DNA of 63,454 nucleotides, the filler included, from Octopus bimaculoides (Eukaryota), in assembly GCF_001194135.2 (NCBI RefSeq). It is 4 parts of 4 records of this genome, joined end to end, with 100 filler letters (N's around TTAATTAATTAA, not from the genome) between each part and the next. Parts side by side here need not be neighbours in the genome. Positions count along the whole stretch, not along the records: positions 27,784 to 51,477 come from NC_069007.1; 3 more parts are not named here. The stretch is one strand, 5' to 3'. Shown in pieces: positions 16,201 through 51,128 of this stretch (the stretch's first letter is position 1; the number at the start of each line of letters is the position of its first letter). Below the pieces are notes generated by a model. The model saw nothing but the letters and a program-made list of their open reading frames with translations. It had not been told where the DNA came from and ran no database searches. A program made the translations under genes and the position numbers.

Positions 16201-17821
16201 ACTACGTAAATCTGTTATAAGACAAAACCAACTGCAAAAGATTTCAGCAACAGTTTCAGTCAGTTCTACTTTAATTGATAACTATGGATCACATCTTTCT
16301 ACATTGACTCAAAATTCTGTATTGAAAACTTCCCAGTGTGTATCTCCTCCTAGCAATTCAGTCCCTATTACAACCACTGTTACAACTTACAGTACAACTA
16401 CTACACCTTCTCCAGCTCAATCCCCTCCTTATGCCCTATCACATGGACGAACTCGTATGCGAACTTCATTTGATCCTGAACATGAAATACCTAGATTGCA
16501 ACGATGGTTTCAACAGAACCAGCATCCGACACGAGAACAAATGGTCCATTATTTAAATGAATTAAACTCTTTAGAATCAAGAAAAGGGCGTAAGCAATTG
16601 GATTTAACTAATATAATTTATTGGTTTAAAAATGCTCGAGCTGCTTTGCGTCGTGCTAGTAAAAATATTGAAGACAGTTTAGAAGGAGAAGAAAATGCTA
16701 ATGGGGAAACATATGGTAATGCAGATTCTCTTCCTTATCTTCCAAATCGCAATGCAATTTACATTGTGCCTCACCCATTGCATTCAACATATGCCAAAGA
16801 TTGTGGTAATGCAATGGATATGACAACTACTAGTCATCATCAAGAGGATGGAAAACCAATGGACGTCAGTCAAAAAAAGAGTGATCCCATGAAAACACCT
16901 GATGCTTCTTCACCACTTCCACTCCCTCGAACTTCATCTGAAGAGAACATGAGGGAAAAACTAGACAAAGGTAAATCATATCTATCATCAGGTGAAAGTG
17001 GTCTAAATCTTGCCTCTCAAAGAGATAGTGTAGAAAGCCTTGTTTCCAAAGAGGAAAATACTTTTAACAACTCAAGATTTCGTGATAGTTTGGAAAGCAC
17101 TAGCTCAAAAGAAAATTCTGCATTCAGTCATTCAAATGCAAAAGAAGATCTTCCATTTAACCACACAATTAGTTCTAAAGAGGAAGAAGAAGGAATTAAT
17201 CATAATCATAAAAAATTCAAGGACGAAGAAATGGACTGTGATGATGTTGATTCATCTATTGATGACAATCGGTCTTTGGATATCAACTCTATGTCTAGTC
17301 AGGATGTAGATCAGTTTAACATTGTTGTCAAACAAGAAATTGATGACAGTAAATCAGCTGACAGTGTGAATTTAAAATCACTATCTAGTAGTGGAATGAC
17401 ACAATCTCTCCAGATACCTGGGCACATGCCTCACGGCCTTCCATTACATTATCTCCCTTATAATTCTCAGTATTATTCCCAGCTTCAAGAAAAATCACAC
17501 TTGAAATCACATAGTCACAGTTTGGAGAAAAAGAGACGTACTCGTGTTTTCATTGACCCCCTTTCAGAGATCCCTAAACTCGAAAAGTGGTTTGCAGAAG
17601 AGACTCATCCATCAGCATATATGATAGATAAGTATTGTGAAGAACTTAATCAATCTGAATATCGACAAAAATTCCCTAAGCTTGAATCTAAAAATGTTCA
17701 ATTATGGTTCAAGAACCATCGTGCAAAAATTAAACGAATACGTTTGGATTTTGGTGACAAACCATCAGGAGTATGTCATGACAATTCATTAGAACTTACA
17801 GAAGTTTCAGAGCTAGGTTAA
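16112..17821 (+). CDS. dve: Terminal coding exon of a Defective proventriculus / Compass / SATB-like double-homeodomain transcription factor
   Basis: Long open frame (track ORF 16064-17821). Strong acceptor tttttttattttcttttgcag at 16091-16111 in phase 0, so the true exon starts at 16112. HD1 RTRMRTSFDPEHEIPRLQRWF...IIYWFKNARAALRR and HD2 KKRRTRVFIDPLSEIPKLEKWF...VQLWFKNHRAKIKR each have an insertion between helices 2 and 3 and K50, which are hallmarks of Drosophila Dve. Stop TAA at 17819-17821. Confidence 0.9.
   Translation, partial: NFLLSISKGEKLAMISEERRQAFNNWYKDQLRKSVIRQNQLQKISATVSVSSTLIDNYGSHLSTLTQNSVLKTSQCVSPPSNSVPITTTVTTYSTTTTPSPAQSPPYALSHGRTRMRTSFDPEHEIPRLQRWFQQNQHPTREQMVHYLNELNSLESRKGRKQLDLTNIIYWFKNARAALRRASKNIEDSLEGEENANGETYGNADSLPYLPNRNAIYIVPHPLHSTYAKDCGNAMDMTTTSHHQEDGKPMDVSQKKSDPMKTPDASSPLPLPRTSSEENMREKLDKGKSYLSSGESGLNLASQRDSVESLVSKEENTFNNSRFRDSLESTSSKENSAFSHSNAKEDLPFNHTISSKEEEEGINHNHKKFKDEEMDCDDVDSSIDDNRSLDINSMSSQDVDQFNIVVKQEIDDSKSADSVNLKSLSSSGMTQSLQIPGHMPHGLPLHYLPYNSQYYSQLQEKSHLKSHSHSLEKKRRTRVFIDPLSEIPKLEKWFAEETHPSAYMIDKYCEELNQSEYRQKFPKLESKNVQLWFKNHRAKIKRIRLDFGDKPSGVCHDNSLELTEVSELG
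16448..16660 (+). other. Homeodomain 1 (atypical, K50)
   Basis: WFKN at 16622-16633, with K50 codon AAA at 16628-16630. Extra residues NSLESRKGRKQ precede the recognition helix. Confidence 0.9.
17528..17743 (+). other. Homeodomain 2 (atypical, K50)
   Basis: WFKN at 17705-17716, with K50 codon AAG at 17711-17713. Extra residues NQSEYRQKFPK precede the recognition helix. Confidence 0.9.
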
Positions 17822-27783: not shown

Positions 27784-27797
27784 AGGGTGAGGTATGC

Positions 27798-27870
<73 letters not shown>

Positions 27871-28394
27871 TAGATATATATGGTTGTGTTTATGTAAAAT
27901 AGGATAGAAGCAGACAAATAGAACAGTTTATTATATATTAAACATACACACCTATATATATATCATCATCAACATCATTTCATGCCAGTTTTTCATGCTG
28001 GCATGGGTTTGAGGGGTCATCATGGTTTGTGTCACCTCCCAAATGCTCCCACTGCTCCCAAATGCAGGTACTCATTCATGTCTACGACTAAATCACTTTC
28101 CTGTGCCTCTACTCTTTAGCAGTCTCTCCAGCATTTCTAGGGCCCTATATAACCATGTCTATCATTATGGACTTTCCTTCGTTGTTTGTTTTTGTTTTTT
28201 GCTGTCTCTTGTTCATGTTAATACATTTTTATGCAGTTTTCCGTAAACTCTCCCGTATACCATATCCTATCATTTGAGTCATTGTCCAATGAGGGCAAGC
28301 TGTCCAGGGTCCAATGACTCACATTGGTCTCTCACTAGTTGAGAGTCTCACCGGATCACACCCGTTACTACATACAGGAGCATAATAGTATGCA

Positions 28395-28670
28395 GGAGGC
28401 CGGTGCCATGTAAAAGTGCCCGCGTCGGTGCCACATAGAAAGCAATGAGTACATTCTGTAAAGTGGTTGGCATTAGGAAGGGCATTCAGCTGTAGAAATA
28501 AAATCAGACTGGAACCTGGTGCAGCTCTCTCCTGTTTACCAGCTCTGGTCAAACCATCCAACCCATGGATGACAGATATTAAATGATGACGATGATGATG
28601 ATGAAGATGAAGGTGGTGGTGGTGGTGATGATGATGGTAATGGGGATGATAGTGATGATGATGATGATGG
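28395..28670 (+). mobile_element. SINE family D with expanded (GAT/GGT)n tail
   Basis: ggttggcattaggaagggcattcagctgtagaaa...ggtcaaaccatccaacccatgg...gatattaaatgatgacgatgatg. Confidence 0.85.
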
Positions 28671-28820
28671 CAGTAGTTTGCTAACTGCTCGATTCTGGCC
28701 ATTGACAGTTTATTATATGTTCATCCCCACTCAGCATCCTGTGATATTCACCATCGATTCAATAAGTTCATCTGTCGAAATATTTCACATCCGCCATGCT
28801 GCATCCGTTGATTTCAATGT

Positions 28821-28882
28821 AACCCTGGCTCGGGTGGTTACCAGTTGCTAGGCAACCACCCGAGCCAGAGTATGAGGGTTAA
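28821..28882. promoter_or_regulatory. GC-rich palindrome containing an RFX X-box; possibly a mini piggyBac-type MITE
   Basis: Perfect 15-bp arms CTGGCTCGGGTGGTT (28825-28839) and AACCACCCGAGCCAG (28854-28868). GTTGCTAGGCAAC at 28844-28856. Outer TAACCCT...AGGGTTAA. Confidence 0.6.
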
Positions 28883-29251
28883 ACAATGTCTTTCTTTTTT
28901 TGCGGTGAATGAAGTAATAATCCTTCCTCACTCCACCCCACCCCACAACCTGACGACTGAAGACAGAAATGAAGAAAAAAGACATGGGTACAATCAGTGT
29001 AAGAGACAAACTCACACACACACAGATACATGTGCATGTAGGAATGCATGGCACAGAAAGACTAAAAGGAATAAAGACAAGACAAGACCAGAGAGAAGGG
29101 GAGACATGAAGAAGAACAGATTGTCACTGATGAGGTCACAGAATGTGTGAGGAAAACAACCCTGAAAAATAAATTAATAATAATAATAATAAAACTAAAG
29201 TGACAATTAAATACAGAGTGCATGTGTTTAATTGGCAAAATATGACCATGA

Positions 29252-29414
29252 AGGTGCATGCCTCAATGGTTAGAGCGTCCGGCTCACAATCATGAGGTGG
29301 TGAGTTTGATTCCCAGACTGGGCTGTGTTGTGTTTCTTGAGCAAAACACTTTATTTCACTTTGCTCCAGTTCACTCAGCTGTAGAAATGAGTTGTGATGT
29401 CACTGGTGCCAAAC
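29252..29414 (+). mobile_element. tRNA-headed SINE with CORE-like central segment
   Basis: gcctcaatggttagagcgtcc...gagtttgattcccagactggg (A/B boxes), then tgtgtttcttgagcaaaacactttatttcac. Confidence 0.8.
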
Positions 29415-29417
29415 TTT

Positions 29418-29625
29418 TTATTGCCCACAGGGGGATAAACAAGGACAGACAAAGGGCTTAAGTTGATTACATCGACCCCAGTGCATAACTGGTACTTATT
29501 TAATCGACCCTGGAAGGATGAAAGGCAAAGTCAACCTCGGCGGAATTTGAACTCAGAACGTAACGACAGACGAAATATCGCTAAGCATTTCACCTGGTGT
29601 GCTAACAATTCTGCCAGTTCGCCGC
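29418..29625 (-). mobile_element. SINE family B
   Basis: cgaccccagtgcataactggtacttatttaatcgacc...gatgaaaggcaaagtcaacctcggcggaatttgaactcagaacg...ctgccagttcgcc. Many copies occur in the window. Confidence 0.9.
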
Positions 29626-29838
29626 TGTATTGTCCCCTTTTGCCTTTCCCTTGGATAACATTGGTGGCATGGAGAGTGGAGGCTGGTATGCATGGGTAAC
29701 TGCTGGTCTTCCATAAACAAACTTGCTCAGTTTTGTGCCTCGGAGGGGAACTTCCTACGTGCGCTACCATGGTCATTCATGACTGAAGGGGATCCCTCCT
29801 TCTTCCTGTATGCACTCTATGCATAGAAGATGGCTGTG

Positions 29839-30410
29839 AAGGCACATTGCTTAGTGGTAAAGGTCTTTAGACCACAAATGTACCTGATGACACATTGTGT
29901 CCTTGAGCAAGACAATTCATTTCACATTGCCCCAGTCCACTCACCTAGCAAAAATGAGTTGTACCAGTAATTTAAATGGGGCCAGCCTTGTCACACTCTG
30001 TGTCACACCGAATCTCCTTGAGAACTACATTAAAGGGGACACGTATCTGTAGAGTACTCAGCCACTTGCTCAGTAATTTCATGAGCAGGCCATTCCATTG
30101 CTCATATCAAGTGGAACACTTGTCATAACCAATCATAAGATCGTGTGTTCAATTCCTGGCAATGCATTGTGTTCTTAAGCAAGACACTTTATCTCACATT
30201 GCCCCAGTTCACTCAACTGGGAAAAATTAGTTGTACCAGTAATTCAAAAGGGACCAGCCTTGTCACACTCTGTGTCACGTTGAATCTCCCTGAGAACTAC
30301 TTTAAAGGGCATACCTATGGAGTACTCAGCCACTTGTTTGATCATTTCATGAAGCAGGCTGTTCGGCTGATCAGATCAACTGGAACCTTTATCATTGTAA
30401 TTGACAGAGG
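29839..30410 (+). mobile_element. Two tandem CORE-like SINE copies sharing their tail with the 27079 SINE
   Basis: Both contain tgtgtccttgagcaagac...cagccttgtcacactctgtgtcac.gaatctc..tgagaactac...gagtactcagccacttg...atttcatga.gcaggc. Confidence 0.8.
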
Positions 30411-30634
30411 GCCAATTTTTGCAAGAGGACTGTAATAGTGTAATATAATCTGAAACAACTTGTTGAGTAATTTCAATGTCAACTACCACCATTACCACCC
30501 TTAAGTACCCCACTACCATTAACGACAACTACCCTTCGGCTAAACACCACCACCACCACCACCACAAAATCCATCACAAGGCCCACCTCATACCTCAAAC
30601 ATTGTCCCCCCCCCCTCCTCCCCATACAATTTTT

Positions 30635-30834
30635 CACTTAACAACCATTTAATCTTTTTTTTTTGTCTTTTTCTCTCATTTCAGGTAAGTGATACTGCTG
30701 ATTATTCTGATGGTGACGGTGATGATGATGATGTTGATTGCTGTGTTCTTGTTGTTATTGCAATTCCACCACATCTCTGATATATTTCACAAGAGACCCT
30801 CGAGTCGAGGAATTTTGGTTAAGTTTTGGTAAGT
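30635..30834 (+). other. Candidate recursive splice site (CAG|GTAAGT) with a downstream 144-nt RS-type exon
   Basis: Branch-like CACTTAAC at 30635, about 28 nt of polypyrimidine tract, CAG at 30682-30684 directly followed by GTAAGT at 30685-30690, and a second donor TG|GTAAGT at 30829-30834. Confidence 0.45.
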
Positions 30835-31745
30835 CATTTTGATTGGAATCTCTATAGATCTGTTGCTATCACTCCCAAATAGAAGTGACAGAGAGAGAGA
30901 GAGAGAGAGAGAGGCACTGTGTTCTGTTCTTTGAATAAAAGCAGCAACAACAGAAGGAAGAAGAAGAGGAAGAAGAAGGAGAAGAAGAACGAAATGAAGA
31001 TGGGGTGGAAGTGGGGTAGAAGGGCTAAAAGGAATTATTNNNNNNNNNNNNNNNNNNNNNNNNNNNNNNNNNNNNNNNNNNNNNNNNNNNNNNNNNNNNN
31101 NNNNNNNNNNNNNNNNNNNNNNNNNNNNNNNNNNNNNNNNNNNNNNNNNNNNNNNNNNNNNNNNNNNNNNNNNNNNNNNNNNNNNNNNNNNNNNNNNNNN
31201 NNNNNNNNNNNNNNNNNNNNNNNNNNNNNNNNNNNNNNNNNNNNNNNNNNNNNNNNNNNNNNNNNNNNNNNNNNNNNNNNNNNNNNNNNNNNNNNNNNNN
31301 NNNNNNNNNNNNNNNNNNNNNNNNNNNNNNNNNNNNNNNNNNNNNNNNNNNNNNNNNNNNNNNNNNNNNNNNNNNNNNNNNNNNNNNNNNNNNNNNNNNN
31401 NNNNNNNNNNNNNNNNNNNNNNNNNNNNNNNNNNNNNNNNNNNNNNNNNNNNNNNNNNNNNNNNNNNNNNNNNNNNNNNNNNNNNNNNNNNNNNNNNNNN
31501 NNNNNNNNNNNNNNNNNNNNNNNNNNNNNNNNNNNNNNNNNNNNNNNNNNNNNNNNNNNNNNNNNNNNNNNNNNNNNNNNNNNNNNNNNNNNNNNNNNNN
31601 NNNNNNNNNNNNNNNNNNNNNNNNNNNNNNNNNNNNNNNNNNNNNNNNNNNNNNNNNNNNNNNNNNNNNNNNNNNNNNNNNNNNNNNNNNNNNNNNNNNN
31701 NNNNNNNNNNNNNNNNNNNNNNNNNNNNNNNNNNNNNNNNNNNNA

Positions 31746-31797
<52 letters not shown>

Positions 31798-32259
31798 TAG
31801 ATAGATATATACATAATATCCATTTATCTGTGTCTCTTTTTATCTATCCACCTATTTGTTTGTTTATCAATTTATCTGTCTGTCTATCTATCTATCTATC
31901 TATCTATCTGTCTATATATATATCTATCTGTCTATATATATATATATACACATAATATCCATTTATCTGTCTCTTTTTATCTATGTACCTATTTGTTTGT
32001 TTATTAATTTATATGTCTATTTATCTATCTATCTGTATATACACACACACACACACACAAATTGATCTACCTGTCTGTCTTTCTGCCAATCAGTACACAC
32101 GTGTGTCTCATGTATGGATATATGTATGTCTATGTCTCTCTCTCTCTCTCTCCGCATATATATACATTAACAGCTGATTGCTCAAGTAGATTAATATTAA
32201 TTGATGCTTGTTAACATTTCACAGTGAGTTAATGTCCTCTATCAAGTGATGCTAATGCA

Positions 32260-33130
32260 GGTGTGTGTGTGTGTGTGTGTGTGTGGACATGGGTGGATGT
32301 ATGTGTACATATGATTGGTATAGTATATGTGTATTGGTGGGGGGGATGTACAGATATCTGTGTATATACCTGAAGATGTGTGAATGCATGTGTGTGTTTG
32401 TGAAAGTATGTGTGTTTGTGAGAGTGTGCATGTTTGTGAGTGTGTGTGTATATTTGTGAGAGTGTGTGTGTGTTTGTGAGTATGTGTGTGTGTGAGAGTG
32501 TGTGTATGTTTGTGAGAGTGTGTATGTGTTTGTGAGTGTGTGTGTGTGTGTGTGTGTGTTTGTGAGTGAGTGTGTGTGCAGACATCTGTGGCAGCTTGTG
32601 TACAGAAGTGTGGGATGTGTGCACGTGTGACCTTGTATATATCAATGATTGTTGATGTGTGTGGATGGGGGGGGGTATTGTGTGTGTTTGTTGTGTGAGG
32701 ACATGTGTATATGTATGGGTGTGGGGATGTGTGTGTGTGTGTGTAATGTATGGATATGTGTGAATGTCTACGTATGTGTGTGTGTGGAGAGATTGTGTGT
32801 GTGTGAGATGATACATCTAGGTGTGATCTGGATGTGGATGTGTGTATTATATGGATGTATATAGGGGGGGTGGCTAAGTATGTGTGTGTGTGTGTGTGTG
32901 TTCTTTCTGTATGTCTGTGAATGTGGGTGTGTGTGGGGGAATGTATGTGTATGTGTTGCTTTCTCTGTGTGTGAATGTGCATTGCTTTGTGTATGTGTGT
33001 ATGTGAATGCATGTTGCTTTGTGTAAGTATGTATGTGTGTGTGTAACTGTATGTGTGTGTGAATATGTGTTGGTTTGTAAATATGTGTTCTTTGTGTGTA
33101 AAACAGAGAGGGAGAGAGATAGAGAGTGTG
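32260..33130. repeat. Degenerate (TG)-rich low-complexity satellite
   Basis: Read directly. It is the source of the His/Thr-rich minus-strand ORFs. Confidence 0.9.
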
Positions 33131-33507
33131 TGAGAGAGGAGTGGGAGGAGATGAAAGTAGCTCTCAAGAGTGAGAAAAGCTTGGGGAAAGATAACAGCTG
33201 TGTGAGAGGGTGAGTAACAGATGATGAGACAGTGGAAGGAGGAGGGCTTCACCACTGAAGATAGCAGTAAGAGGGTGGTAAGTAAACAGAGGGGAAGTGA
33301 GAGGTAACTGGTCTGTGAGTGAGACATTTGAGTAAGGTGAGAGACTGAGTGGAAGTGGTTAATATGTGAGTGTAAGTGGAGATAGTTACTGTGTGAGTGT
33401 GACAATTTACAAATTGGAAGAAGTAAGTTTGTTTTGAAGAAGAGAATCAGATTCTTAGAGAATAACCATGGGGCTATAAAATTTGAATATAGAATAATAT
33501 AATATTG

Positions 33508-34080
33508 TTTTCTAGTCTAGACACAAGGACTGAAATTTTGTGGGAGGGGACCAGCCGATTAGATCAACCCCAGTAGGCAACTGGTGCTTCATTTATCGAC
33601 CCCAAAAGGATGAAAGGCAAAGTCGACCTTGGCAGAATTTGAACTCAGAATGAAAAGGCAGATGAAATACCGCAAAGCATTTCGCCCGGCGTGCTGATGT
33701 TTCTTATTTTTTACTGCCCACAAAGGGCTACACATAGAGGGGATAAACAGAGACAGACAAATGGATTAAGTCGATTATATTGACCCCAGTGTGTTACTGG
33801 TACTTATTTAATCGACCTCGGCAGAATTTGAACTCAGAACATAGCGGCAGATGAAATACCACTAAACATTTCGCCCTGCATGCAAACGTTTCTGTCGGTG
33901 TGCTAATGTTTCTGCCAGCTCTCATCTGTCTGTCTTTTCTACTCTAGGCACAAGGCCCAAAATTTTTGGTAAGGGAGATAGTTGATTAGATTGACCCAAG
34001 TATGCAACTGGTACTTAATTTATCGATCCCCCAAAAGGATGAAAGGCAAAGTCGACCTTGGCAGAATTTGAACTCAAAAT
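33508..34080 (-). mobile_element. Head-to-tail cluster of about 4 partial SINE family B copies
   Basis: The block aactggtact..tttatcgacc...gaaaggcaaagtcgacc.tggcagaatttgaactcagaa recurs at ~33580, ~33800 and ~34010. Confidence 0.9.
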
Positions 34081-34264
34081 GTCTGTGGACAAATGGGAAA
34101 TACAGAAAAAAAATTTTGAAAAAGCAGTTAAGACTGACATTTCAAGATGGGCCCTTCATCAAAACATTAAAGAACTACTACTGCTGTTGCTACTACTACT
34201 ACTGCTGCTACTGTTACTACTATTACTCCTACTGATGATGATGATGAATTAGAGACAGTTAATC

Positions 34265-36340: not shown

Positions 36341-36611
36341 AAGAGAAACCTTCTTTACATTGTGAGCTTAAATCCTGTTGAGATCAACTCTACCTTTCTC
36401 TCTTTTTTGGATCCAATACAATCAAATGTACCAGTCAATATAATGAGGTCAATATAATCGACAAACTCCTTCAAATATATCTGTGGTCTTGTGCCTATGT
36501 TACAAATTACTACTATTAAAGCTAATGTATTCGTGATGGACACACACACATGCATACATGCATAAATGTAGACATATACATCATGCATTCATTCATGCAT
36601 ACATACATACA

Positions 36612-36827
36612 GGAGTGACTGTGTGGTAAGAAGCTTGCGTACCAATTTACCAACCACATGGTTCTGGGTTCAGTCCTACTGAGTGGCACCTTGGGCAAGT
36701 GTCTTCTACTATAGCCTTGGGCCAACCAAAGTCTTGTGAGTGAATTTGGTAGACAGAAACTGAAAGAACCCCATCATATATGTGTGTGTGTATGTGTATA
36801 TGTATGTATGTGTGTGAGTAAATATAT

Positions 36828-36860
<33 letters not shown>

Positions 36861-37125
36861 NNNNNNNNNNNNNNNNNNNNNNNNNNNNNNNNNNNNNNNN
36901 NNNNNNNNNNNNNNNNNNNNNNNNNNNNNNNNNNNNNNNNNNNNNNNNNNTTGACAACCGACGCTGGTGTGTTTTTGTCCCCCGTATCTTAGCGGTTTAG
37001 CAAAAGAGTCCAATAGAATAAGTACTAGGCTTACAAAGAATAAGTCCTGGGGTTGATTTGTTAAACTAAAAGGCAGTGCTCCAGCATGGCCACAGTCAAA
37101 TGACTGAAACAAGTAAAAGAATAAG
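36612..37125 (+). mobile_element. Full-length SINE family A (gap inside its microsatellite)
   Basis: ggagtgactgtgtggtaagaagcttg...ggttcagtcctactg...aatgactgaaacaagtaaaagaataagagaataaaagaat. Confidence 0.92.
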
Positions 37126-37150
37126 AGAATAAAAGAATATATATATGTGC

Positions 37151-37306
37151 GATGGGCTTCTTTCAGTTTCTGTCTACCAAATCCACTCACAAGGCTTTGG
37201 TTGGCCTGAGGCTATAGTAGATGATACTTGCCCAAGGTGCCACATAGTGGGACTGAACCTGGAATCATGTGGTTGGGAAGCAATTTTCTTACCATACAGC
37301 CACACC
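37151..37306 (-). mobile_element. SINE family A head, inverted relative to the 36612 copy
   Basis: The reverse complement matches 36612-36776 at roughly 85% by eye. Confidence 0.9.
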
Positions 37307-37419
37307 TGCCACTATGTATATATATAGTGTGTATGCTGTACTTTGAATTTTTAGCACCAGTGTGTCAAACCAGTCTGGTTTACAAAGTACTCGATTCCAA
37401 CACTAAATATGTATAGTTC

Positions 37420-39394: not shown

Positions 39395-39748
39395 TTGGGC
39401 CTCTTGGAGGCAAAGTGGGTGAGCTCCTGGGCCACATGGAGGCAAAATGGCTGAGTTCCTTTCGAGTGTTGAGCCTCACAGAGGCAATGACTGAGACCTT
39501 TGGCATTATGCTGTGCTTAAAAAGAAGACCCATCAAGCCGAGCAAAATCACAGTCGTGGCAGATACTGGTGGCACGTGAAAGCACCCATTACACTCTTGG
39601 TGTGGTTGACATTAGGGAGAGCATCCAGCTGTAGAAAACCATGCCAAATCAGACTGGAGTCTGGTGCAGCCTTCCAGCATGCCATCCCAGTCAAACTGTC
39701 CAACCCATGCCAGCATGGACAATGGACATTAAATGATATGATGATGAT
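39395..39748 (+). mobile_element. Near full-length SINE family D
   Basis: gtgggtgagctcctgggcc...ttgacattagggagagcatccagctgtagaaa...gtcaaactgtccaacccatgccagcatggacaatggacattaaatgatatgatgatg. Confidence 0.88.
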
Positions 39749-40414
39749 TTATATTCACATGTGCTTGTATGCATATATATATATATATATATATATACAC
39801 TGTTGGGTTCCAGACTAAAGNNNNNNNNNNNNNNNNNNNNNNNNNNNNNNNNNNNNNNNNNNNNNNNNNNNNNNNNNNNNNNNNNNNNNNNNNNNNNNNN
39901 NNNNNNNNNNNNNNNNNNNNNNNNNNNNNNNNNNNNNNNNNNNNNNNNNNNNNNNNNNNNNNNNNNNNNNNNNNNNNNNNNNNNNNNNNNNNNNNNNNNN
40001 NNNNNNNNNNNNNNNNNNNNNNNNNNNNNNNNNNNNNNNNNNNNNNNNNNNNNNNNNNNNNNNNNNNNNNNNNNNNNNNNNNNNNNNNNNNNNNNNNNNN
40101 NNNNNNNNNNNNNNNNNNNNNNNNNNNNNNNNNNNNNNNNNNNNNNNNNNNNNNNNNNNNNNNNNNNNNNNNNNNNNNNNNNNNNNNNNNNNNNNNNNNN
40201 NNNNNNNNNNNNNNNNNNNNNNNNNNNNNNNNNNNNNNNNNNNNNNNNNNNNNNNNNNNNNNNNNNNNNNNNNNNNNNNNNNNNNNNNNNNNNNNNNNNN
40301 NNNNNNNNNNNNNNNNNNNNNNNNNNNNNNNNNNNNNNNNNNNNNNNNNNNNNNNNNNNNNNNNNNNNNNNNNNNNNNNNNNNNNNNNNNNNNNNNNNNN
40401 NNNNNNNNNNNNNN

Positions 40415-41030: not shown

Positions 41031-41168
41031 GTCTACCAAATCCACTCACAAGGCTTTGGTCAGCCCAAGGCTATAGTAGAAGACACTTGCCCAAGGTACC
41101 ACACAGTGGGACTGAACCCGTAACCATGTGGTTGGTAAGCAAGCTACTTACCACACAGCCACTCCTGC
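41031..41168 (-). mobile_element. SINE family A head
   Basis: ctaccaaatccactcacaaggctttgg...gtgggactgaacccgtaaccatgtggttggtaagcaagctacttaccacacagccactcc. Confidence 0.9.
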
Positions 41169-41914
41169 ACCTATTTAATATTTATTATTTTCTAAAAATA
41201 GCAGCCAAATATCCCTGAAACAATGCTGTACAGTCTAAAATTGAAAAATATATATATAACAGACATATTGGCAAATGTCGTAGTGGAAAGGTGGAGTAGA
41301 AATTACTGGTTGTTGTTTAGTCCAAAGACAAAATGATCTTGCAGATCTATGTTCAAAGGTGTTTCAGCTATGACCATCCCATCTCATCTCTTTGTAAATC
41401 CAAGACTTCATTCTTTAATGTGTCCTTTCTCTTTTAAAATGTTAGGCAAGGGTGTGACATCTATTTCTAGTTGTTTGAGCAATTCCACAGAGGCTACCCA
41501 TGTTGGCTGATGTCATCCAGGGTATGTTGTACTTGAAAAGCAATTTCGCTTGGTTGTCATATCTGGAAAGCCCTTTACCAAAGCTCTACTCCACTGAGGT
41601 CACCTGGGAATTAAACAACAGCAACAACAACAATTATTATTCTTTGTTTTATTGTATATTCGACATATATACACGTGTGTTTGAACTTTATTCTTCTATC
41701 TGCTATGAATTCTCAGTCTGGAACTTTCTTGCATACACTTTGTTTCTTATGACAGAATACTCAGTGTACAGAGATGCTAACCTATAACCTGGGATGTCCC
41801 AGAAACAGGTGTAAGACATTAATTACTTCTACTTTTCCTTTTTTTGATTCCCCTTATTCTAATTGAATATTCTAAATCACCTAAGGTACTCATCCTGCCT
41901 TGGCTTTGTTTTCC

Positions 41915-42544: not shown

Positions 42545-43260
42545 TGAATGAGAGAGGAGTGCATGCCATCAAAGTGACATTGAGGTACAAATATACAAAG
42601 TCTAGTATACCCATCATGACTACCTGTTTAAGGGTATACCAGGCACATGCATCACAACCATATGTGTACAACATGCCGATCTCATACCAAGATAAATAAC
42701 GCACAACCTTTCAAGTGGGGCCCAGTTGGAGTTTACCTCAGCTCAAGTAGGCCATCCCATTTGAAAAGATCCCTGAATAAGAATTGTTTAAGGATGTTGA
42801 ACAAAATACCCATGTTTCCAAGGGTGAATTATTCAAACCCCAAAGAATTCCTCTCAATACATGGCTATGATGCATCAGGCACATGCATCACAACCATATG
42901 TGCACGACAGGGAGATCTCATATCAAGATAAACAGCGCATGACCTTGCAGGTGAGGTCCAGTTAGAATTTTCTTCAGTTCAAATAGCCCATCCTGCTCGA
43001 AAAGTCTCTGAATAAGATTTAAGGATGATGAATAAAACACCCATATTTCCAGAGGCGAATTATCCAAACCCCAAAGAATTTCTTTCAACACATGACTATG
43101 ATGCTCCCCCACTACTTCTGCTCGTGATCAGAGATGCACATATCGTCAGCCACTAAGGGACATGCTCAACTTTTTAGGATCAAGCAACTGACAAGCAAAT
43201 CTGTGGTATTGAGCAGAATATTTGCTGTAGCCCTTCTTTTATACCAAGACAAAACAATGT
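42545..43260. mobile_element. Interspersed repeat with an internal ~236-bp tandem duplication
   Basis: Unit 1 at 42640-42873 and unit 2 at 42876-43104 both run caggcacatgcatcacaaccatatgtg...aaaccccaaagaattc...catg.ctatgatgc, at about 80% identity by eye. Confidence 0.75.
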
Positions 43261-44416: not shown

Positions 44417-44478
44417 ACAGTGGTGCTCCAGCATGACTGCAGCCACATGGCTGAAACGAATAAACAAATATATATATA

Positions 44479-44755
44479 TCATCATCATCATTATCATAAT
44501 CATTGTCATTTAACATTTGTTTTTCATGCTGGCATGGGTTGGACGGTTTGACCAGAGATGGCAAGCTGGAGCACCAGGTTCCAGTCTCATTTGGCTTAAT
44601 TTCTATGTCTGGATGCCCTTCCTGACGCCAACTCTTTTACAGGGTGTGTGCTCATTGCTATTAACTGGCACCAGCACTGGTACCATTACGTGGCGCTGGC
44701 ATCGAAGCTTTTTATGAGAAACCAGCACAGATGTTTTTACACGGCACCAGCACAT
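44479..44755 (-). mobile_element. SINE family D
   Basis: catgctggcatgggttggacggtttgacc...ggatgcccttcctgacgccaac...ggcaccagcac. Confidence 0.85.
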
Positions 44756-45348: not shown

Positions 45349-45587
45349 GGTGGTTGTCTACTCCTTAAACAGAGTTTGACCACCTCCTGCACCTACACCT
45401 TAGCCCTTTCATGGCGTCTGATGTGGCTTTTTAAACCAGACAGTGTTTTGAAAAAACACCCACACAGATTGCACCTCTGATTTGCACTACCAATACCTGC
45501 AAGTAAGTTCTGCTCATTGTGGATCCTAACATGTCTTTTAAGACCCCCATTGGATTTGCAAACCCTCTGGCACACACCACATTCATA
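45349..45587 (-). mobile_element. Two C2H2 zinc fingers plus a short 3' tail; probably the 3' end of a 5'-truncated RTE-type LINE
   Basis: YECGVCQRVCKSNGGLKRHVRIH-NEQNLLAGIGSANQR-CNLCGCFFKTLSGLKSHIRRH-ERAKV* (45587-45393). There is no TGEKP linker. The 5' side abuts (TACA)n, and the 3' side has about 45 nt then (TA)n. Confidence 0.7.
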
Positions 45588-45609
45588 TGTATGTATGTAT
45601 GTATGTATA

Positions 45610-45765
45610 TATGCATATATGAATACAGGATGTCACCAATCGTGTAAACAACATGAAGTATGAAAAGCAGTGAGAGAGAAAAAAATGGAAAACAGGTCAA
45701 GTAATCACAGAGAACCACCCTTCATCAGTTGTCGGCTGTCTATCTACTCCCCATTTCAAGCATTC
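45610..45765. mobile_element. Second copy of the 1314-1830 repeat family
   Basis: tacaggatgtcaccaa...aaaatggaaaacagg.caagtaa...ttcatcagttgtcggctgtctatct. Confidence 0.75.
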
Positions 45766-45928
45766 ATATGTATATATATATATATATATATATACATACA
45801 CACACACACAAACATATATATTCTTCTCATTTTTACCGAGCATCAAACTAATACACTTGTTTGTTCTTCCCTCACACTGTCTTTGTCCTTTGTTTTCTGT
45901 ACATTGAACCATATATATTGTTTTACAC

Positions 45929-46328
45929 TCTTTTACTTGTTTCAGTCACCTGGCTGTGACCATGCTGGGGCACTGCCTTTAGTTGAAGAAATTGACCTCA
46001 GGACTTATTCTCTGTAAGCTCAGTACATACTCTATTGGTCTCCTTTGTCGACCCGCTAAGGCACAGGGATGCAAACTCACCACCATCGGTTGTCAAGTGA
46101 TGATGGAGGGACAAACACAGACACAAAAACATATGCATGCATATGCATATATATATATATATATATATACACAACAGGTTTCTTTCAGTTTCCGTCTAAA
46201 AAATCCACTCACAAGGCTTTGGTCAACTCAAGGCTATAGTAGAAGACACTCGCCCAAGGTGCCACGCAGTGGGACTGAACCTGAAACCATGTGGTTGGTA
46301 AGCAAGCTACTTACCACACAGCCACTCC
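45929..46328 (-). mobile_element. Full-length SINE family A
   Basis: tcttttacttgtttcagtc...ggttgtcaagtga...cagtgggactgaacctgaaaccatgtggttggtaagcaagctacttaccacacagccactcc. Confidence 0.9.
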
Positions 46329-46351
46329 TAAATATATATGTNNNNNNNNNN

Positions 46352-46409
<58 letters not shown>

Positions 46410-48024: not shown

Positions 48025-48544
48025 TTAACTCTTTTGACACCAGCATGGCTTTGTTATATTTAAAATTAATTGACAGAAACGGAGAGCATCTCAACAGAAA
48101 TACGGTAACAAAATGGTTAAAAGATATATTAGAGAAGCACTACTTAACCCTTTTGATACCAACATGCCTGAAACAGCCTCTGGCTCTGTAATACAAATGT
48201 CTTGTTTTCATAAGTTCTCAATTAAAATCTTCCACCAAACCTTAGTCACAATTTATGTTCCTAACACTAGCTTAACAATAACTAAGCTATTTTACTAAAT
48301 TCTTTGTTATATTTAAAATTAATTAAAAGAAACACAGAACATCTCAACAGAAATATGGTAACAAAATGGTTAAATGGTTAAAATAGAGAAACAATTCTTA
48401 ACCCTTTTGATACCAACCTGGTTGAAACTAGCTCTGGTTCTGTAGTACAAATGTCTTGTTTTCAAAAGTTCTGAATTAAAATCTTCCACCAAACATTAGT
48501 CACAATTTATGTTCTTAACACTAGCTTACTAAGTTATTTTACTT
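48025..48544. mobile_element. Three adjacent copies of a piggyBac-type (TTAA) MITE inserted into a SINE B
   Basis: TTAACCCTTTTGATACC...GGTAACAAAATGGTTAA. Copies lie at 48025-48120 (internally deleted), 48144-48373 and 48398-48544 (truncated). SINE B sequence at 47945-48024 stops at the first TTAA. Confidence 0.75.
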
Positions 48545-48990
48545 GTAAGGTGAAACACTGGGGTCGATGTTAGCAGCTAGTCCCCTCACCCCCAAATTTC
48601 ACACCCTGCTCCTATGTTCTGAGTTCAAATTCTGCTGAAGTCAACTTTGCCTTTCATGCTTTCAGAGTTGATAAGTACCAGTAAAATACTGGGGTTGATG
48701 TAATCGACTATCCCTCTCCCCACAAGTTCCAGGCCTTGTGCCTATAGTAGAAAGGATTGTCATTATTATTAAAGCAGCAAGCTGGTAGAATCGTTAGGAA
48801 GCCAGGCAAAATGCTTAGCAGCATTTCATCCTTCCTTGTGCTCTGAGTTCAAATCGCACCAAGGTCGACTTTGCCTTTCATCCTTTCAAGGTCAATGAAA
48901 TAAGTGTCTGTTTTGCACTGAAGTCAATGTAATCGACTAGCCCCTTCCCCCAAAAATTTTCAAAGCTTTGTGCCTAGAGTAGAAATAATT
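48545..48990 (+). mobile_element. Cluster of 2-3 SINE family B copies
   Basis: The block tctgagttcaaat...gtc.actttgcctttcat...aagt...ggggtcgatgtaatcgact...ccttgtgcctatagtagaaa repeats. Confidence 0.88.
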
Positions 48991-49751
48991 ACCATTATCT
49001 ATCTAGTGGTTATGGCAAAAGATGTGTGGTGGACAAAGCTGAAAGGATTGGGGACAGACACCTTCCTCCCCAGTTAAGCTCTCATCAACTTTGTGTAAAG
49101 GAGAGTGAAGTGCTCTGTCTGTCTCTATCTCTCTCTCTCTCTCTCCCTCCCTCTCTTCCAGTGAATTTGTGAAAAGATGGGTGACTGTAACAAAAACGGG
49201 CAGAGTGAAGTGCCCTACTCTAATCAAGCAAATGTATTTAGGAGAACAGAAGAGAGGGCTCGTGTCTTTGCTGGTTAGGATAATCCTGGATTTGTTGAGA
49301 TTGTTTGATTGGCCTTAGCTGAAGTTTCTTCTGTACCAAGAGGGCTGCATCATTCATGGTATCACATACTTCATTAACTACGCATACCTTTTATCTCGTT
49401 TAACTGTTTTTTCCATTTCTTTCTCTTATCTTTTATGTAAATCCCCACACAAACTGCAGTCTGCATTGTTGTCTGTCCTTGAGATGTCCCCCTCATCTAT
49501 GCTCCTCCAGCTGATAAAAGAAATTATCATTATTATTATTTTTGTTTTCCCTTTAATCACAGGTTTTGTTGTAATTCCTGGTATCTTGTATGCATAGAGG
49601 GCTTGCTGCCTGCAGCCTTCAGTACCATGATATCTGTTCTTTTCAACAATCTAATACTTTCCTGGTTATTCTGCCCATGCCAAGCAGGAAAACTTTTCAT
49701 AATAGTTCCATTATTATTATTATCATTGTCATTATTATTATTATTACTACT

Positions 49752-50900: not shown

Positions 50901-50953
<53 letters not shown>

Positions 50954-50964
50954 AAATAATAATA

Positions 50965-51120
50965 ATCCTTTCTACTATAGGCACTAGGCCTGAAATTTTG
51001 GGAGAGGACACTAGTCAATTATATTGACTTCAGTGTTTCACTGGTACTTAATTTATTGACCCCTGAAAGGATGAAAGCTAAAGTCGACCTTGGCAGATTT
51101 TGAACTCAGAACACAGCAAA
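50965..51120 (-). mobile_element. SINE family B fragment between (AAT)n tracts
   Basis: tcctttctactataggcactaggcctgaaatttt...gaaaggatgaaagctaaagtcgaccttggcag. Confidence 0.85.
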
Positions 51121-51128
51121 AGGTGAAA

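What the first reader, a model, noticed from the sequence alone, without database searches (positions are those of the whole stretch)
30635..30834. Candidate recursive splice site with a poison RS-exon in a cephalopod intron
Seen: branch-like CACTTAAC/ATTTAAT, a ~28-nt pyrimidine tract, then TTTCAG immediately followed by the consensus donor GTAAGT (30685). A second GTAAGT at 30829 defines a 144-nt exon with stops in all three phases (G|TAA, GT|AAG TGA, and TGA at codon 32). Known: this AG|GT ratchet plus cryptic exon with premature stops is the architecture of recursive splicing in Drosophila and vertebrate long introns. Inference: a + strand transcript with a very long intron crosses this region and is spliced stepwise. 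I know of no description of recursive splicing in molluscs. Caveats: the host gene is unknown (dve stops at 17821, and an assembly join lies at 27.7 kb), and one site can arise by chance.
Basis: partly seen in the sequence, partly recalled or inferred. Interest (0 to 1): 0.7.

Follow-up and report, generated by a model that had tools for sequence, protein, structure and literature searches.

The report
Unverified recursive-splice-like motif in octopus DNA
A textbook-perfect "acceptor joined to donor" splice motif really sits at 30684|30685 in repeat-rich, non-coding octopus DNA, but no transcript, host gene or conservation could be shown, so it stays an untested candidate, about as likely chance as a real recursive splice site.

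Summary
The sequence observation is correct in every detail. A 29-nt pyrimidine tract is followed by CAG|GTAAGT (junction 30684|30685). A second GTAAGT lies 144 nt downstream, and all three frames carry stops. It is the only AGGTAAGT in the piece and a clear outlier: 13.5 bits on a juxtaposed 3'ss/5'ss matrix, against 3.8 for the next of 131 AG|GT sites. The best site in 25 kb of independent Octopus bimaculoides DNA scores 5.3 bits.

About 0.005 such sites are expected per 20-kb piece. That still means roughly 600 chance sites in a 2.7-Gb genome. The tract lies among simple repeats. The "poison exon" feature carries no information, because 68% of random 144-nt windows here have stops in all frames.

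The interpretation could not be tested. No coding exon or annotated protein maps to the piece on either strand. No orthologous DNA could be retrieved, and no RNA data are available. The repeats confirm an Octopus origin. A T>A skew on the + strand is a weak hint of + strand transcription.

My estimates:
- about 0.55: an unused chance juxtaposition
- about 0.30: a genuine ratchet point
- about 0.10: an ordinary non-coding exon

Interest is modest until RNA-seq or conservation data exist.

The parts
30633..30653 (+). Branch-point-like motifs: TTAAC at 30638-30642 (A 43 nt from the junction) and TTAAT at 30649-30653 (A 32 nt from the junction)
   Evidence: The position fits the -36..-21 range seen for fly recursive lariats. 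However, a yTnAy motif occurs in 40% of random windows.
30653..30681 (+). Polypyrimidine tract: T C T10 G T C T5 C T C T C A T T T, 29 nt with two purines
   Evidence: It has 18/20 and 27/30 pyrimidines. The 3'ss half scores 8.6 bits; only 5 of 2,303 AG dinucleotides in the piece score as high.
30682..30690 (+). Juxtaposed acceptor and donor, CAG|GTAAGT, with the junction between 30684 and 30685 (candidate ratchet point)
   Evidence: It is the only AGGTAAGT on either strand of the piece. Combined score is 13.5 bits against 3.8 for the runner-up.
30685..30828 (+). 144-nt interval between the two donors: putative cryptic RS-exon, or an ordinary non-coding exon. It is rich in (GAT)n/(GTT)n simple sequence.
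   Evidence: Stops in all three frames, which is uninformative (68% of random windows). No Pfam hit for the frame that reads through the junction.
30829..30834 (+). Second donor-like site, TTG|GTAAGT
   Evidence: It is the only other GT in 30685-31039 that scores above 2 bits (4.5 bits, against 8.8 for CAG|GTAAGT). A GTAAGT lies 30-300 nt downstream of 7.6% of random positions.
30545..30565 (.). Context: (CAC)7 microsatellite. It belongs to the simple-sequence block 30476-31022 around the site, which also holds a C-run, T10, (GAT)n, (AG)12 at 30890-30913 and (AGA)n at 30952-30989.
29893..30395 (+). Context: two tandem copies of a SINE-like repeat (29893-30126 and 30165-30395, 82% identical), ending 290 nt upstream of the site
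31040..31744 (.). Context: assembly gap of 705 N, starting only 206 nt beyond the second donor

Best explanation
The site is most likely an unselected juxtaposition. A T/C-rich simple-sequence run happens to end in CAG next to a GTAAGT, in repeat-rich, non-coding (intergenic or intronic) Octopus DNA, and the site has no demonstrated use.

On this reading nothing is spliced here. Either no + strand pre-mRNA crosses the site, or the site is one of the several hundred equally good motifs that a 2.7-Gb genome carries by chance.

Shown: the motif exists, its local rarity, its expected genome-wide abundance, and its simple-repeat surroundings. Inferred: that it is not used.
For: - The expected rate of sites this good is 0.0046 per 20,120-nt piece over both strands. 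That scales to about 600 per 2.7-Gb genome. Published backgrounds for looser RP-site matches are 0.07-0.12 per 100 kb on non-transcribed strands (PMC2773006).
- The pyrimidine tract is part of a simple-sequence block: (CAC)7, a C-run, T10, (GAT)n, (AG)12 and (AGA)n. Windows of 18 or more pyrimidines in 20 make up 1% of the piece, 50 times binomial expectation.
- No coding exon or annotated protein maps anywhere in the 23.7-kb piece on either strand. No ORF of the piece is on record. Intergenic DNA is therefore at least as likely as an intron.
- The supporting details are uninformative: stops in all frames 68%, branch-like motif 40%, downstream GTAAGT 7.6%.
- The finding was picked out by eye from a scan of many windows, so a roughly 1% per-window coincidence is expected to turn up.
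Against: - The site is a very strong outlier: 13.5 bits against a maximum of 5.3 among 302 other AG|GT sites in 45 kb of octopus DNA.
- It also has a consensus donor 144 nt downstream (p about 0.08) and a branch-like TTAAT at -32.
- All five invertebrates examined by Shepard et al. show 4- to 22-fold sense-strand enrichment of such sites in long introns. If octopus behaves likewise, a site of this quality is more likely selected than accidental.
- Unique sequence of the piece has a T>A skew of 0.07 on the + strand, positive in 8 of 10 contigs. That is the direction expected if + is the sense strand of a transcription unit.
- A perfect acceptor/donor pair lying in a sense intron would probably be used whether or not it is selected.
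Confidence: 0.55

Rival explanations
1. The site is a genuine recursive splice site (ratchet point) with a cryptic RS-exon.

- A long intron of an unidentified + strand gene crosses the piece.
- The 144-nt interval is first recognised by exon definition, using the 3'ss at 30684 and the 5'ss at 30829.
- The upstream exon is then spliced to 30685, which regenerates a GTAAGT donor at the new junction.
- That donor outcompetes TTG|GTAAGT at 30829. The 144 nt and the rest of the intron are removed in a second step that leaves no trace in the mRNA.

All of these steps are inferred.
For: - The motif is near-maximal for the (Y)nNCAG|GTAAGT consensus (consensus in PMC2773006).
- It is the only strong AG|GT in 45 kb of octopus DNA.
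- There is a downstream consensus donor, as the exon-definition model requires (PMC8605326; PMC6224609; PMC6110457).
- A branch-like A lies at -32, within the fly recursive-lariat range.
- At least 23.7 kb carries no coding exon, compatible with a long intron.
- There is a T>A skew on the + strand.
- Invertebrates including sea urchin show sense-strand enrichment of such sites.
Against: - No host gene, transcript, junction, lariat or conservation evidence of any kind is available.
- About 600 equally good sites are expected by chance per genome.
- The putative RS-exon is 144 nt. Fly cryptic RS-exons are about 50 nt, and most have the second donor less than 100 nt away.
- The intronic halves of the two donors are identical (GTAAGT), so dominance of the regenerated donor depends on an unknown upstream exon.
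- In large, repeat-rich vertebrate genomes, efficient intronic RS sites are very rare: 10 in human against 197 in fly. They also show no sense-strand enrichment. The octopus genome resembles vertebrates in size and repeat load.
- The GC skew is slightly negative, so the strand-asymmetry hint is mixed.
Confidence: 0.3
2. The interval is an ordinary, non-recursive exon. On this reading 30685-30828 is a conventional 144-nt non-coding exon of a + strand transcript, such as an untranslated-region exon, a long non-coding RNA exon, or an alternative NMD-triggering cassette. It is included using the acceptor at 30684 and the donor at 30829, and it merely happens to begin with GTAAGT.
For: - Both flanking splice signals are strong: 8.6 bits for the 3'ss half and 4.5 bits for TTG|GTAAGT.
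- 144 nt is a typical internal-exon length.
- Thousands of annotated exons in deuterostomes start with a donor-like sequence and are nevertheless included, because the exon junction complex represses the regenerated donor (PMC6224609).
Against: - There is no transcript evidence.
- The interval has no coding potential or protein match.
- A regenerated GTAAGT is about as strong as a donor can be and would be expected to compete effectively.
- The interval consists largely of (GAT)n/(GTT)n simple sequence.
Confidence: 0.1
3. The motif is carried by a repeated element. The segment 30396-31039 would belong to a transposon or satellite family that happens to contain the motif, so that many identical copies exist in the genome.
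For: - The piece is dense with SINE-like repeats.
- Two copies end 290 nt upstream of the site.
- On the minus strand the T10 run reads as an A10 tail.
Against: - 30396-31039 has no second copy in the piece apart from microsatellites.
- It has no match in the 25-kb O. bimaculoides locus L001.
- No inverted-repeat or fold signal is present.
- The sample is only 45 kb, so this test is weak.
Confidence: 0.04

Closest known systems
Drosophila intronic ratchet points with cryptic RS-exons (Ubx, kuz, Bx, luna; Hatton 1998, Burnette 2005, Duff 2015, Joseph 2018/2021)
   Same: - The same juxtaposed motif: a long T-rich tract, CAG|GTAAGT, a branch-like A near -30, and a downstream donor that can define a cryptic, non-coding exon with stops.
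- It is embedded in at least 24 kb without coding exons. Fly recursive introns are 11-133 kb.
   Different: - Fly sites are defined by junction reads, saw-tooth coverage and lariats, and the motif is ultraconserved. None of this is available here.
- Fly cryptic RS-exons are about 50 nt, mostly with the second donor less than 100 nt away. Here the distance is 144 nt.
- The host gene and strand are unknown.
Vertebrate recursive splicing with RS-exons in long neuronal genes (CADM1/2, ANK3, NCAM1, OPCML; Sibley 2015, Blazquez 2018)
   Same:
- A large, repeat-rich genome.
   Different: They lie in very long introns and are conserved.
- Vertebrates show no sense-strand enrichment of the motif, so a motif alone has low predictive value there.
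Chance AG|GT 'RP-site' matches on non-transcribed strands and in intergenic DNA (background class in Shepard et al. 2009)
   Same: - A motif match with no transcript support, found in repeat-rich non-coding DNA.
- Background density is about 0.1 per 100 kb at the 80% score threshold in all animals tested.
   Different: This site is far above a threshold match: it is close to the maximum possible score and is accompanied by a second consensus donor.

Membership tests
Recursive splice site / ratchet point with cryptic RS-exon | [quoted passage not shown] | tested here: met
   The site has 27/30 pyrimidines followed by CAG|GTAAGT and scores 13.5 bits. It is the top site of 131 AG|GT in the piece, where the runner-up scores 3.8, and it exceeds all 172 AG|GT sites in L001.
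Recursive splice site / ratchet point with cryptic RS-exon | Lies on the sense strand inside a long intron of a transcribed gene | tested here: inconclusive
   No coding exon or annotated protein maps to either strand of the 23.7-kb piece, and no ORF is on record. This is compatible with a long intron or with intergenic DNA. A T>A skew of 0.07 on the + strand is a weak hint of + strand transcription, and the calibration sample is too small.
Recursive splice site / ratchet point with cryptic RS-exon | A downstream 5' splice site that defines a short cryptic RS-exon (about 50 nt, mostly under 100 nt in flies) | tested here: inconclusive
   TTG|GTAAGT at 30829 is the only other donor-like site before the gap. 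It lies 144 nt away, which is longer than typical in flies. A GTAAGT in the 30-300 nt range occurs by chance 7.6% of the time.
Recursive splice site / ratchet point with cryptic RS-exon | The regenerated donor is stronger than the RS-exon donor, so that the exon is skipped | not testable with these tools
   Both donors read GTAAGT on the intron side. The exon side of the regenerated donor depends on an unknown upstream exon.
Recursive splice site / ratchet point with cryptic RS-exon | Splicing intermediates: exon-to-ratchet-point junction reads, saw-tooth intronic coverage, and lariats from the ratchet point | not testable with these tools
   No RNA data are reachable. These are the criteria of Duff et al..
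Recursive splice site / ratchet point with cryptic RS-exon | Evolutionary conservation of the acceptor|donor motif above the intronic background | not testable with these tools
   No orthologous cephalopod DNA could be fetched. The metagenome scan found only unrelated contigs that share a 20-mer.
Recursive splice site / ratchet point with cryptic RS-exon | Genome-wide excess of such motifs on the sense strand of long introns in the species | not tested
   Only 45 kb of octopus DNA was available (the piece plus L001). Published ratios are 4-22 in five invertebrates and about 1 in vertebrates. No mollusc has been examined.
Poison (NMD-triggering) cassette exon | Inclusion in some mRNAs introduces a premature stop codon | tested here: inconclusive
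   Stops occur in all three frames, but so do they in 68% of random 144-nt windows here. Inclusion itself cannot be tested.

The most novel reading that the evidence does not exclude
The site is a functional, conserved ratchet point in a long, SINE-bloated intron of an octopus gene. It would be the first recursive splice site outside insects and vertebrates with sequence-level definition, and the first in Lophotrochozoa. That would imply that stepwise intron removal with cryptic RS-exons is ancestral to bilaterians and is used to handle the very large introns of cephalopods.
Probability: 0.3. Interest if true: 0.5.

Novelty: new member of a known kind. Interest (0 to 1): 0.3.

Why it matters
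Recursive splicing has been shown experimentally only in Drosophila and a few vertebrate genes. Motif enrichment suggests it is widespread in invertebrates (PMC2773006), and no mollusc has been examined.

Cephalopods combine invertebrate ancestry with vertebrate-sized, repeat-rich genomes and long neuronal genes. Whether they remove long introns stepwise is therefore a fair open question.

A single motif cannot answer it. This site is, however, a concrete and cheap test case: one RT-PCR or a look at existing total RNA-seq would settle it. The same matrix applied genome-wide, comparing sense and antisense strands of long introns, would settle the general question.

If the site proves unused, it is simply one of several hundred expected chance motifs and has no further importance.

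Tried and rejected
1. Orthologous or identical loci. Seven exact look-ups of ORFs from the piece, including the three nearest the site, were all empty. Unannotated ORFs of this genome are evidently not in the collection.

2. Host gene. All non-repeat, non-low-complexity ORF pieces of both strands, plus the ORFs around the site, were concatenated into 3,414 aa. No protein scored E<=0.01.

3. Pfam scans.
   - Ten of the most protein-like ORFs gave only a 2x C2H2 zinc-finger fragment, 15 kb away on the minus strand. It has no word-level homologues.

4. RNA genes and structure.
   - No tRNA was found.
   - Rfam gave only sub-threshold microRNA-family hits on TG/TA microsatellites.
   - The RNA fold of 30460-30900 is no better than shuffles, z = +0.89.
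   - No meaningful inverted repeat surrounds the site. A foldback or MITE explanation was rejected.

5. Repeat-family membership of 30396-31039. There is no second copy in the piece or in L001.

6. Metagenome scan with the 20-mer across the junction. It gave 12 hits, all one unrelated locus family, with no similarity to the window beyond the 20-mer. This is coincidence, not homology.

7. Strand-skew calibration in L001. The sample is too small to be useful.

8. A coding exon ending at CAG|GTAAGT was rejected. The frame that reads into the junction is a translation of the T-run and C-run and has no family match.

9. Sibley et al. 2015 (PMC4471124) is not held in the library. Its content is cited through PMC6224609, PMC5126111 and PMC8605326.

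Full report
**What is there**

The piece (27784-51477) consists of ten contigs separated by runs of N, with 20,120 determined bases. The contig that holds the finding runs from 27784 to 31039.

- TTAAC at 30638-30642 and TTAAT at 30649-30653.
- A 29-nt pyrimidine tract at 30653-30681 with two purines.
- CAG at 30682-30684, abutting GTAAGT at 30685-30690.
- A second GTAAGT at 30829-30834.

The interval 30685-30828 is 144 nt. It has TAA in phase 1, AAG-TGA in phase 2 and TGA at codon 32 in phase 0.

**Is it more than chance?**

AGGTAAGT occurs once on the two strands of the piece. Markov models of order 0 to 3, trained on the piece, predict 0.13-0.43 occurrences of YAGGTAAGT. The nonamer alone is therefore unremarkable.

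I scored all 131 AG|GT dinucleotide pairs with a weight matrix that juxtaposes the intron side of a 3' splice site with the intron side of a 5' splice site. The frequencies come from general knowledge of metazoan splice logos, so the matrix is a ranking device and not a calibrated predictor.
- The site scores 13.5 bits and the runner-up 3.8.
- Only 5 of 2,303 AG have as good an upstream half.
- Only 41 of 2,531 GT have as good a downstream half.
- This gives 0.0046 expected sites per piece.
- In an independent 25-kb stretch of Octopus bimaculoides (L001) the best of 172 AG|GT scores 5.3 bits.

Locally the site is a real outlier. Scaled to a genome of about 2.7 Gb (my knowledge of the O. bimaculoides assembly size), the same rate gives about 600 sites. 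Requiring a GTAAGT 30-300 nt downstream (7.6% of random positions) leaves some tens.

- Stops in all three frames occur in 68% of random 144-nt windows.
- A yTnAy motif occurs in 40% of random -45..-16 windows.
- Pyrimidine-rich windows (18 or more of 20) make up 1% of this piece, about 50 times the binomial expectation, because of simple repeats.

The features were also chosen after the site was seen, in a scan of many windows.

**Surroundings**

The site sits inside a block of simple sequence:
- (CAC)7 at 30545-30565.
- A C-run.
- The T10 that forms most of the tract.
- (GAT)n/(GTT)n inside the 144 nt.
- (AG)12 at 30890-30913.
- (AGA)n at 30952-30989.

Two tandem copies of a SINE-like element end 290 nt upstream (29893-30126 and 30165-30395, 82% identical). 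An assembly gap starts 206 nt after the second donor.

The segment 30396-31039 has no second copy in the piece or in L001. There is no inverted-repeat architecture and no RNA structure beyond shuffles (z = +0.89). Nothing shows that the motif belongs to a repeat family, but only 45 kb could be searched.

**Taxon**

A query made of SINE-derived ORFs hit one protein, 'uncharacterized protein LOC106867260 [Octopus bimaculoides]'. Its locus on chromosome CM046609.1 of GCA_001194135.2 (L001) shares several repeat families with the piece at up to 95% identity. An Octopus origin is supported.

**Host gene and strand**

I found no coding exon.
- ORF inspection and Pfam gave only a fragment with two C2H2 zinc fingers at 45396-45632 on the minus strand. 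It has no word-level homologue.
- A 3,414-aa concatenate of every non-repeat, non-low-complexity ORF piece of both strands, plus the ORFs around the site, matched nothing at E<=0.01. The database searched demonstrably contains annotated O. bimaculoides proteins.
- Seven exact ORF look-ups were empty.

The piece is therefore either part of an intron of at least about 24 kb or intergenic.

One weak directional hint exists. After masking repeats, T exceeds A on the + strand by 7% (z about 6 if bases were independent), and the skew is positive in 8 of 10 contigs. This is the direction generally seen on the sense strand of introns (established for mammals; my knowledge). The G/C skew is slightly the other way, and the one calibration available in octopus is too small to use.

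**Related sequences**

These are one locus family, mutually collinear over kilobases at 82-99.9% identity. They share nothing with the window beyond the 20-mer. This is coincidence. No conservation test was possible.

**What is known**
- Ratchet points have the consensus (Y)nNCAG|GTAAGT (PMC2773006).
- In Drosophila, 197 were defined by junction reads, saw-tooth coverage and lariats. They lie in introns of 11-133 kb, and only 6% of such long introns have one. Branch points peak near -30 (preprint 10.1101/006163).
- They are recognised through a cryptic RS-exon of about 50 nt with its own donor, mostly less than 100 nt away. The motif is ultraconserved while the exon body is not (PMC8605326; PMC6224609; PMC6110457).
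- Human has about 10 efficient intronic sites.
- Background density of threshold matches on non-transcribed strands is about 0.1 per 100 kb in all animals. Sense-strand enrichment is 4- to 22-fold in four insects and a sea urchin and about 1 in eight vertebrates.
- No paper in the library links recursive splicing with molluscs, cephalopods or octopus.

**Weighing**

This section is my inference and not a tool result.
- I take roughly 18% of a strand-specific genome position to be sense-intronic.
- I discount for the need for an intron of at least 24 kb.
- I allow a 35% chance that octopus shows invertebrate-type enrichment (about 8-fold), and otherwise vertebrate-type (about 1.2-fold).
- I give the T>A skew modest weight.
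- This puts the probability that the site lies on the sense strand of a long intron at about 0.35-0.5.

A perfect acceptor/donor pair in that position would probably be used. On that basis my estimates are:
- about 0.30 for a real recursive site
- about 0.10 for a conventional non-coding exon using the same signals
- about 0.55 for an unused chance juxtaposition
- a small remainder for a repeat-borne motif

**Verdict**

If real, it would be a new member of a known kind in a new phylum, an expected extension rather than a surprise. Interest is modest. The tests that would settle it are cheap and are listed under next steps.

Noticed in passing
window 45396-45632 (- strand): A 79-codon open frame encodes two canonical C2H2 zinc fingers (YECGVC...HVRIH and QRCNLC...HIRRH). 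It starts straight after an (ATAC)n microsatellite and ends in a stop. Pfam zf-C2H2 scores E = 8.7e-11. No protein in the 5.8-billion database shares three 5-residue words with it. It is probably a relic of a zinc-finger gene or of a transposon protein, or else an unannotated exon.
   Followed up: partly
window 36599-37325, 41031-41185, 45838-46393; also 28396-28669, 39438-39796, 44468-44738; 29431-29629, 33486-34082, 48612-48998, 50946-51128: At least three SINE-like repeat families occur in both orientations. They are shared with O. bimaculoides chromosome CM046609.1 at up to 95% identity. One family is translated inside the annotated 'uncharacterized protein LOC106867260' (P0001 residues ~150-210), so that gene model contains an exonised or mis-annotated SINE.
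   Followed up: partly
L002-L013 (metagenome contigs), e.g. L004:1913-1932 (-): Twelve contigs from host-associated metagenomes carry the identical 20-mer CATTTCAG|GTAAGTGATACT. It lies inside a block that is invariant among copies that are otherwise 82-92% identical, and it is followed by TACTAAC...AG. The contigs are unrelated to the window. This is an acceptor|donor juxtaposition in an unidentified eukaryote that may itself be worth a look.
   Followed up: partly
window 31745-33405: A long TG/TA/TC-rich microsatellite and minisatellite field shows extreme G>C skew (0.4-0.5). It produces spurious ORFs of up to 387 codons on the minus strand. With similar tracts elsewhere, it also accounts for all the sub-threshold Rfam 'mir-297/mir-466/mir-3149' hits. 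These are artefacts of simple sequence, not RNA genes.
   Followed up: yes
window 48049-48543 and 42640-43104: There are two local tandem duplications: a 254-nt unit x1.9 at 86-89% identity, and a ~230-nt unit x2 at 82% identity.
   Followed up: no
window 27784-51477 (whole piece): T exceeds A on the + strand by 4.5% overall and by 7.1% after masking repeats, and the skew is positive in 8 of 10 contigs. The G/C skew is slightly negative. This is a possible transcription-associated strand asymmetry, but it is uncalibrated for octopus.
   Followed up: partly
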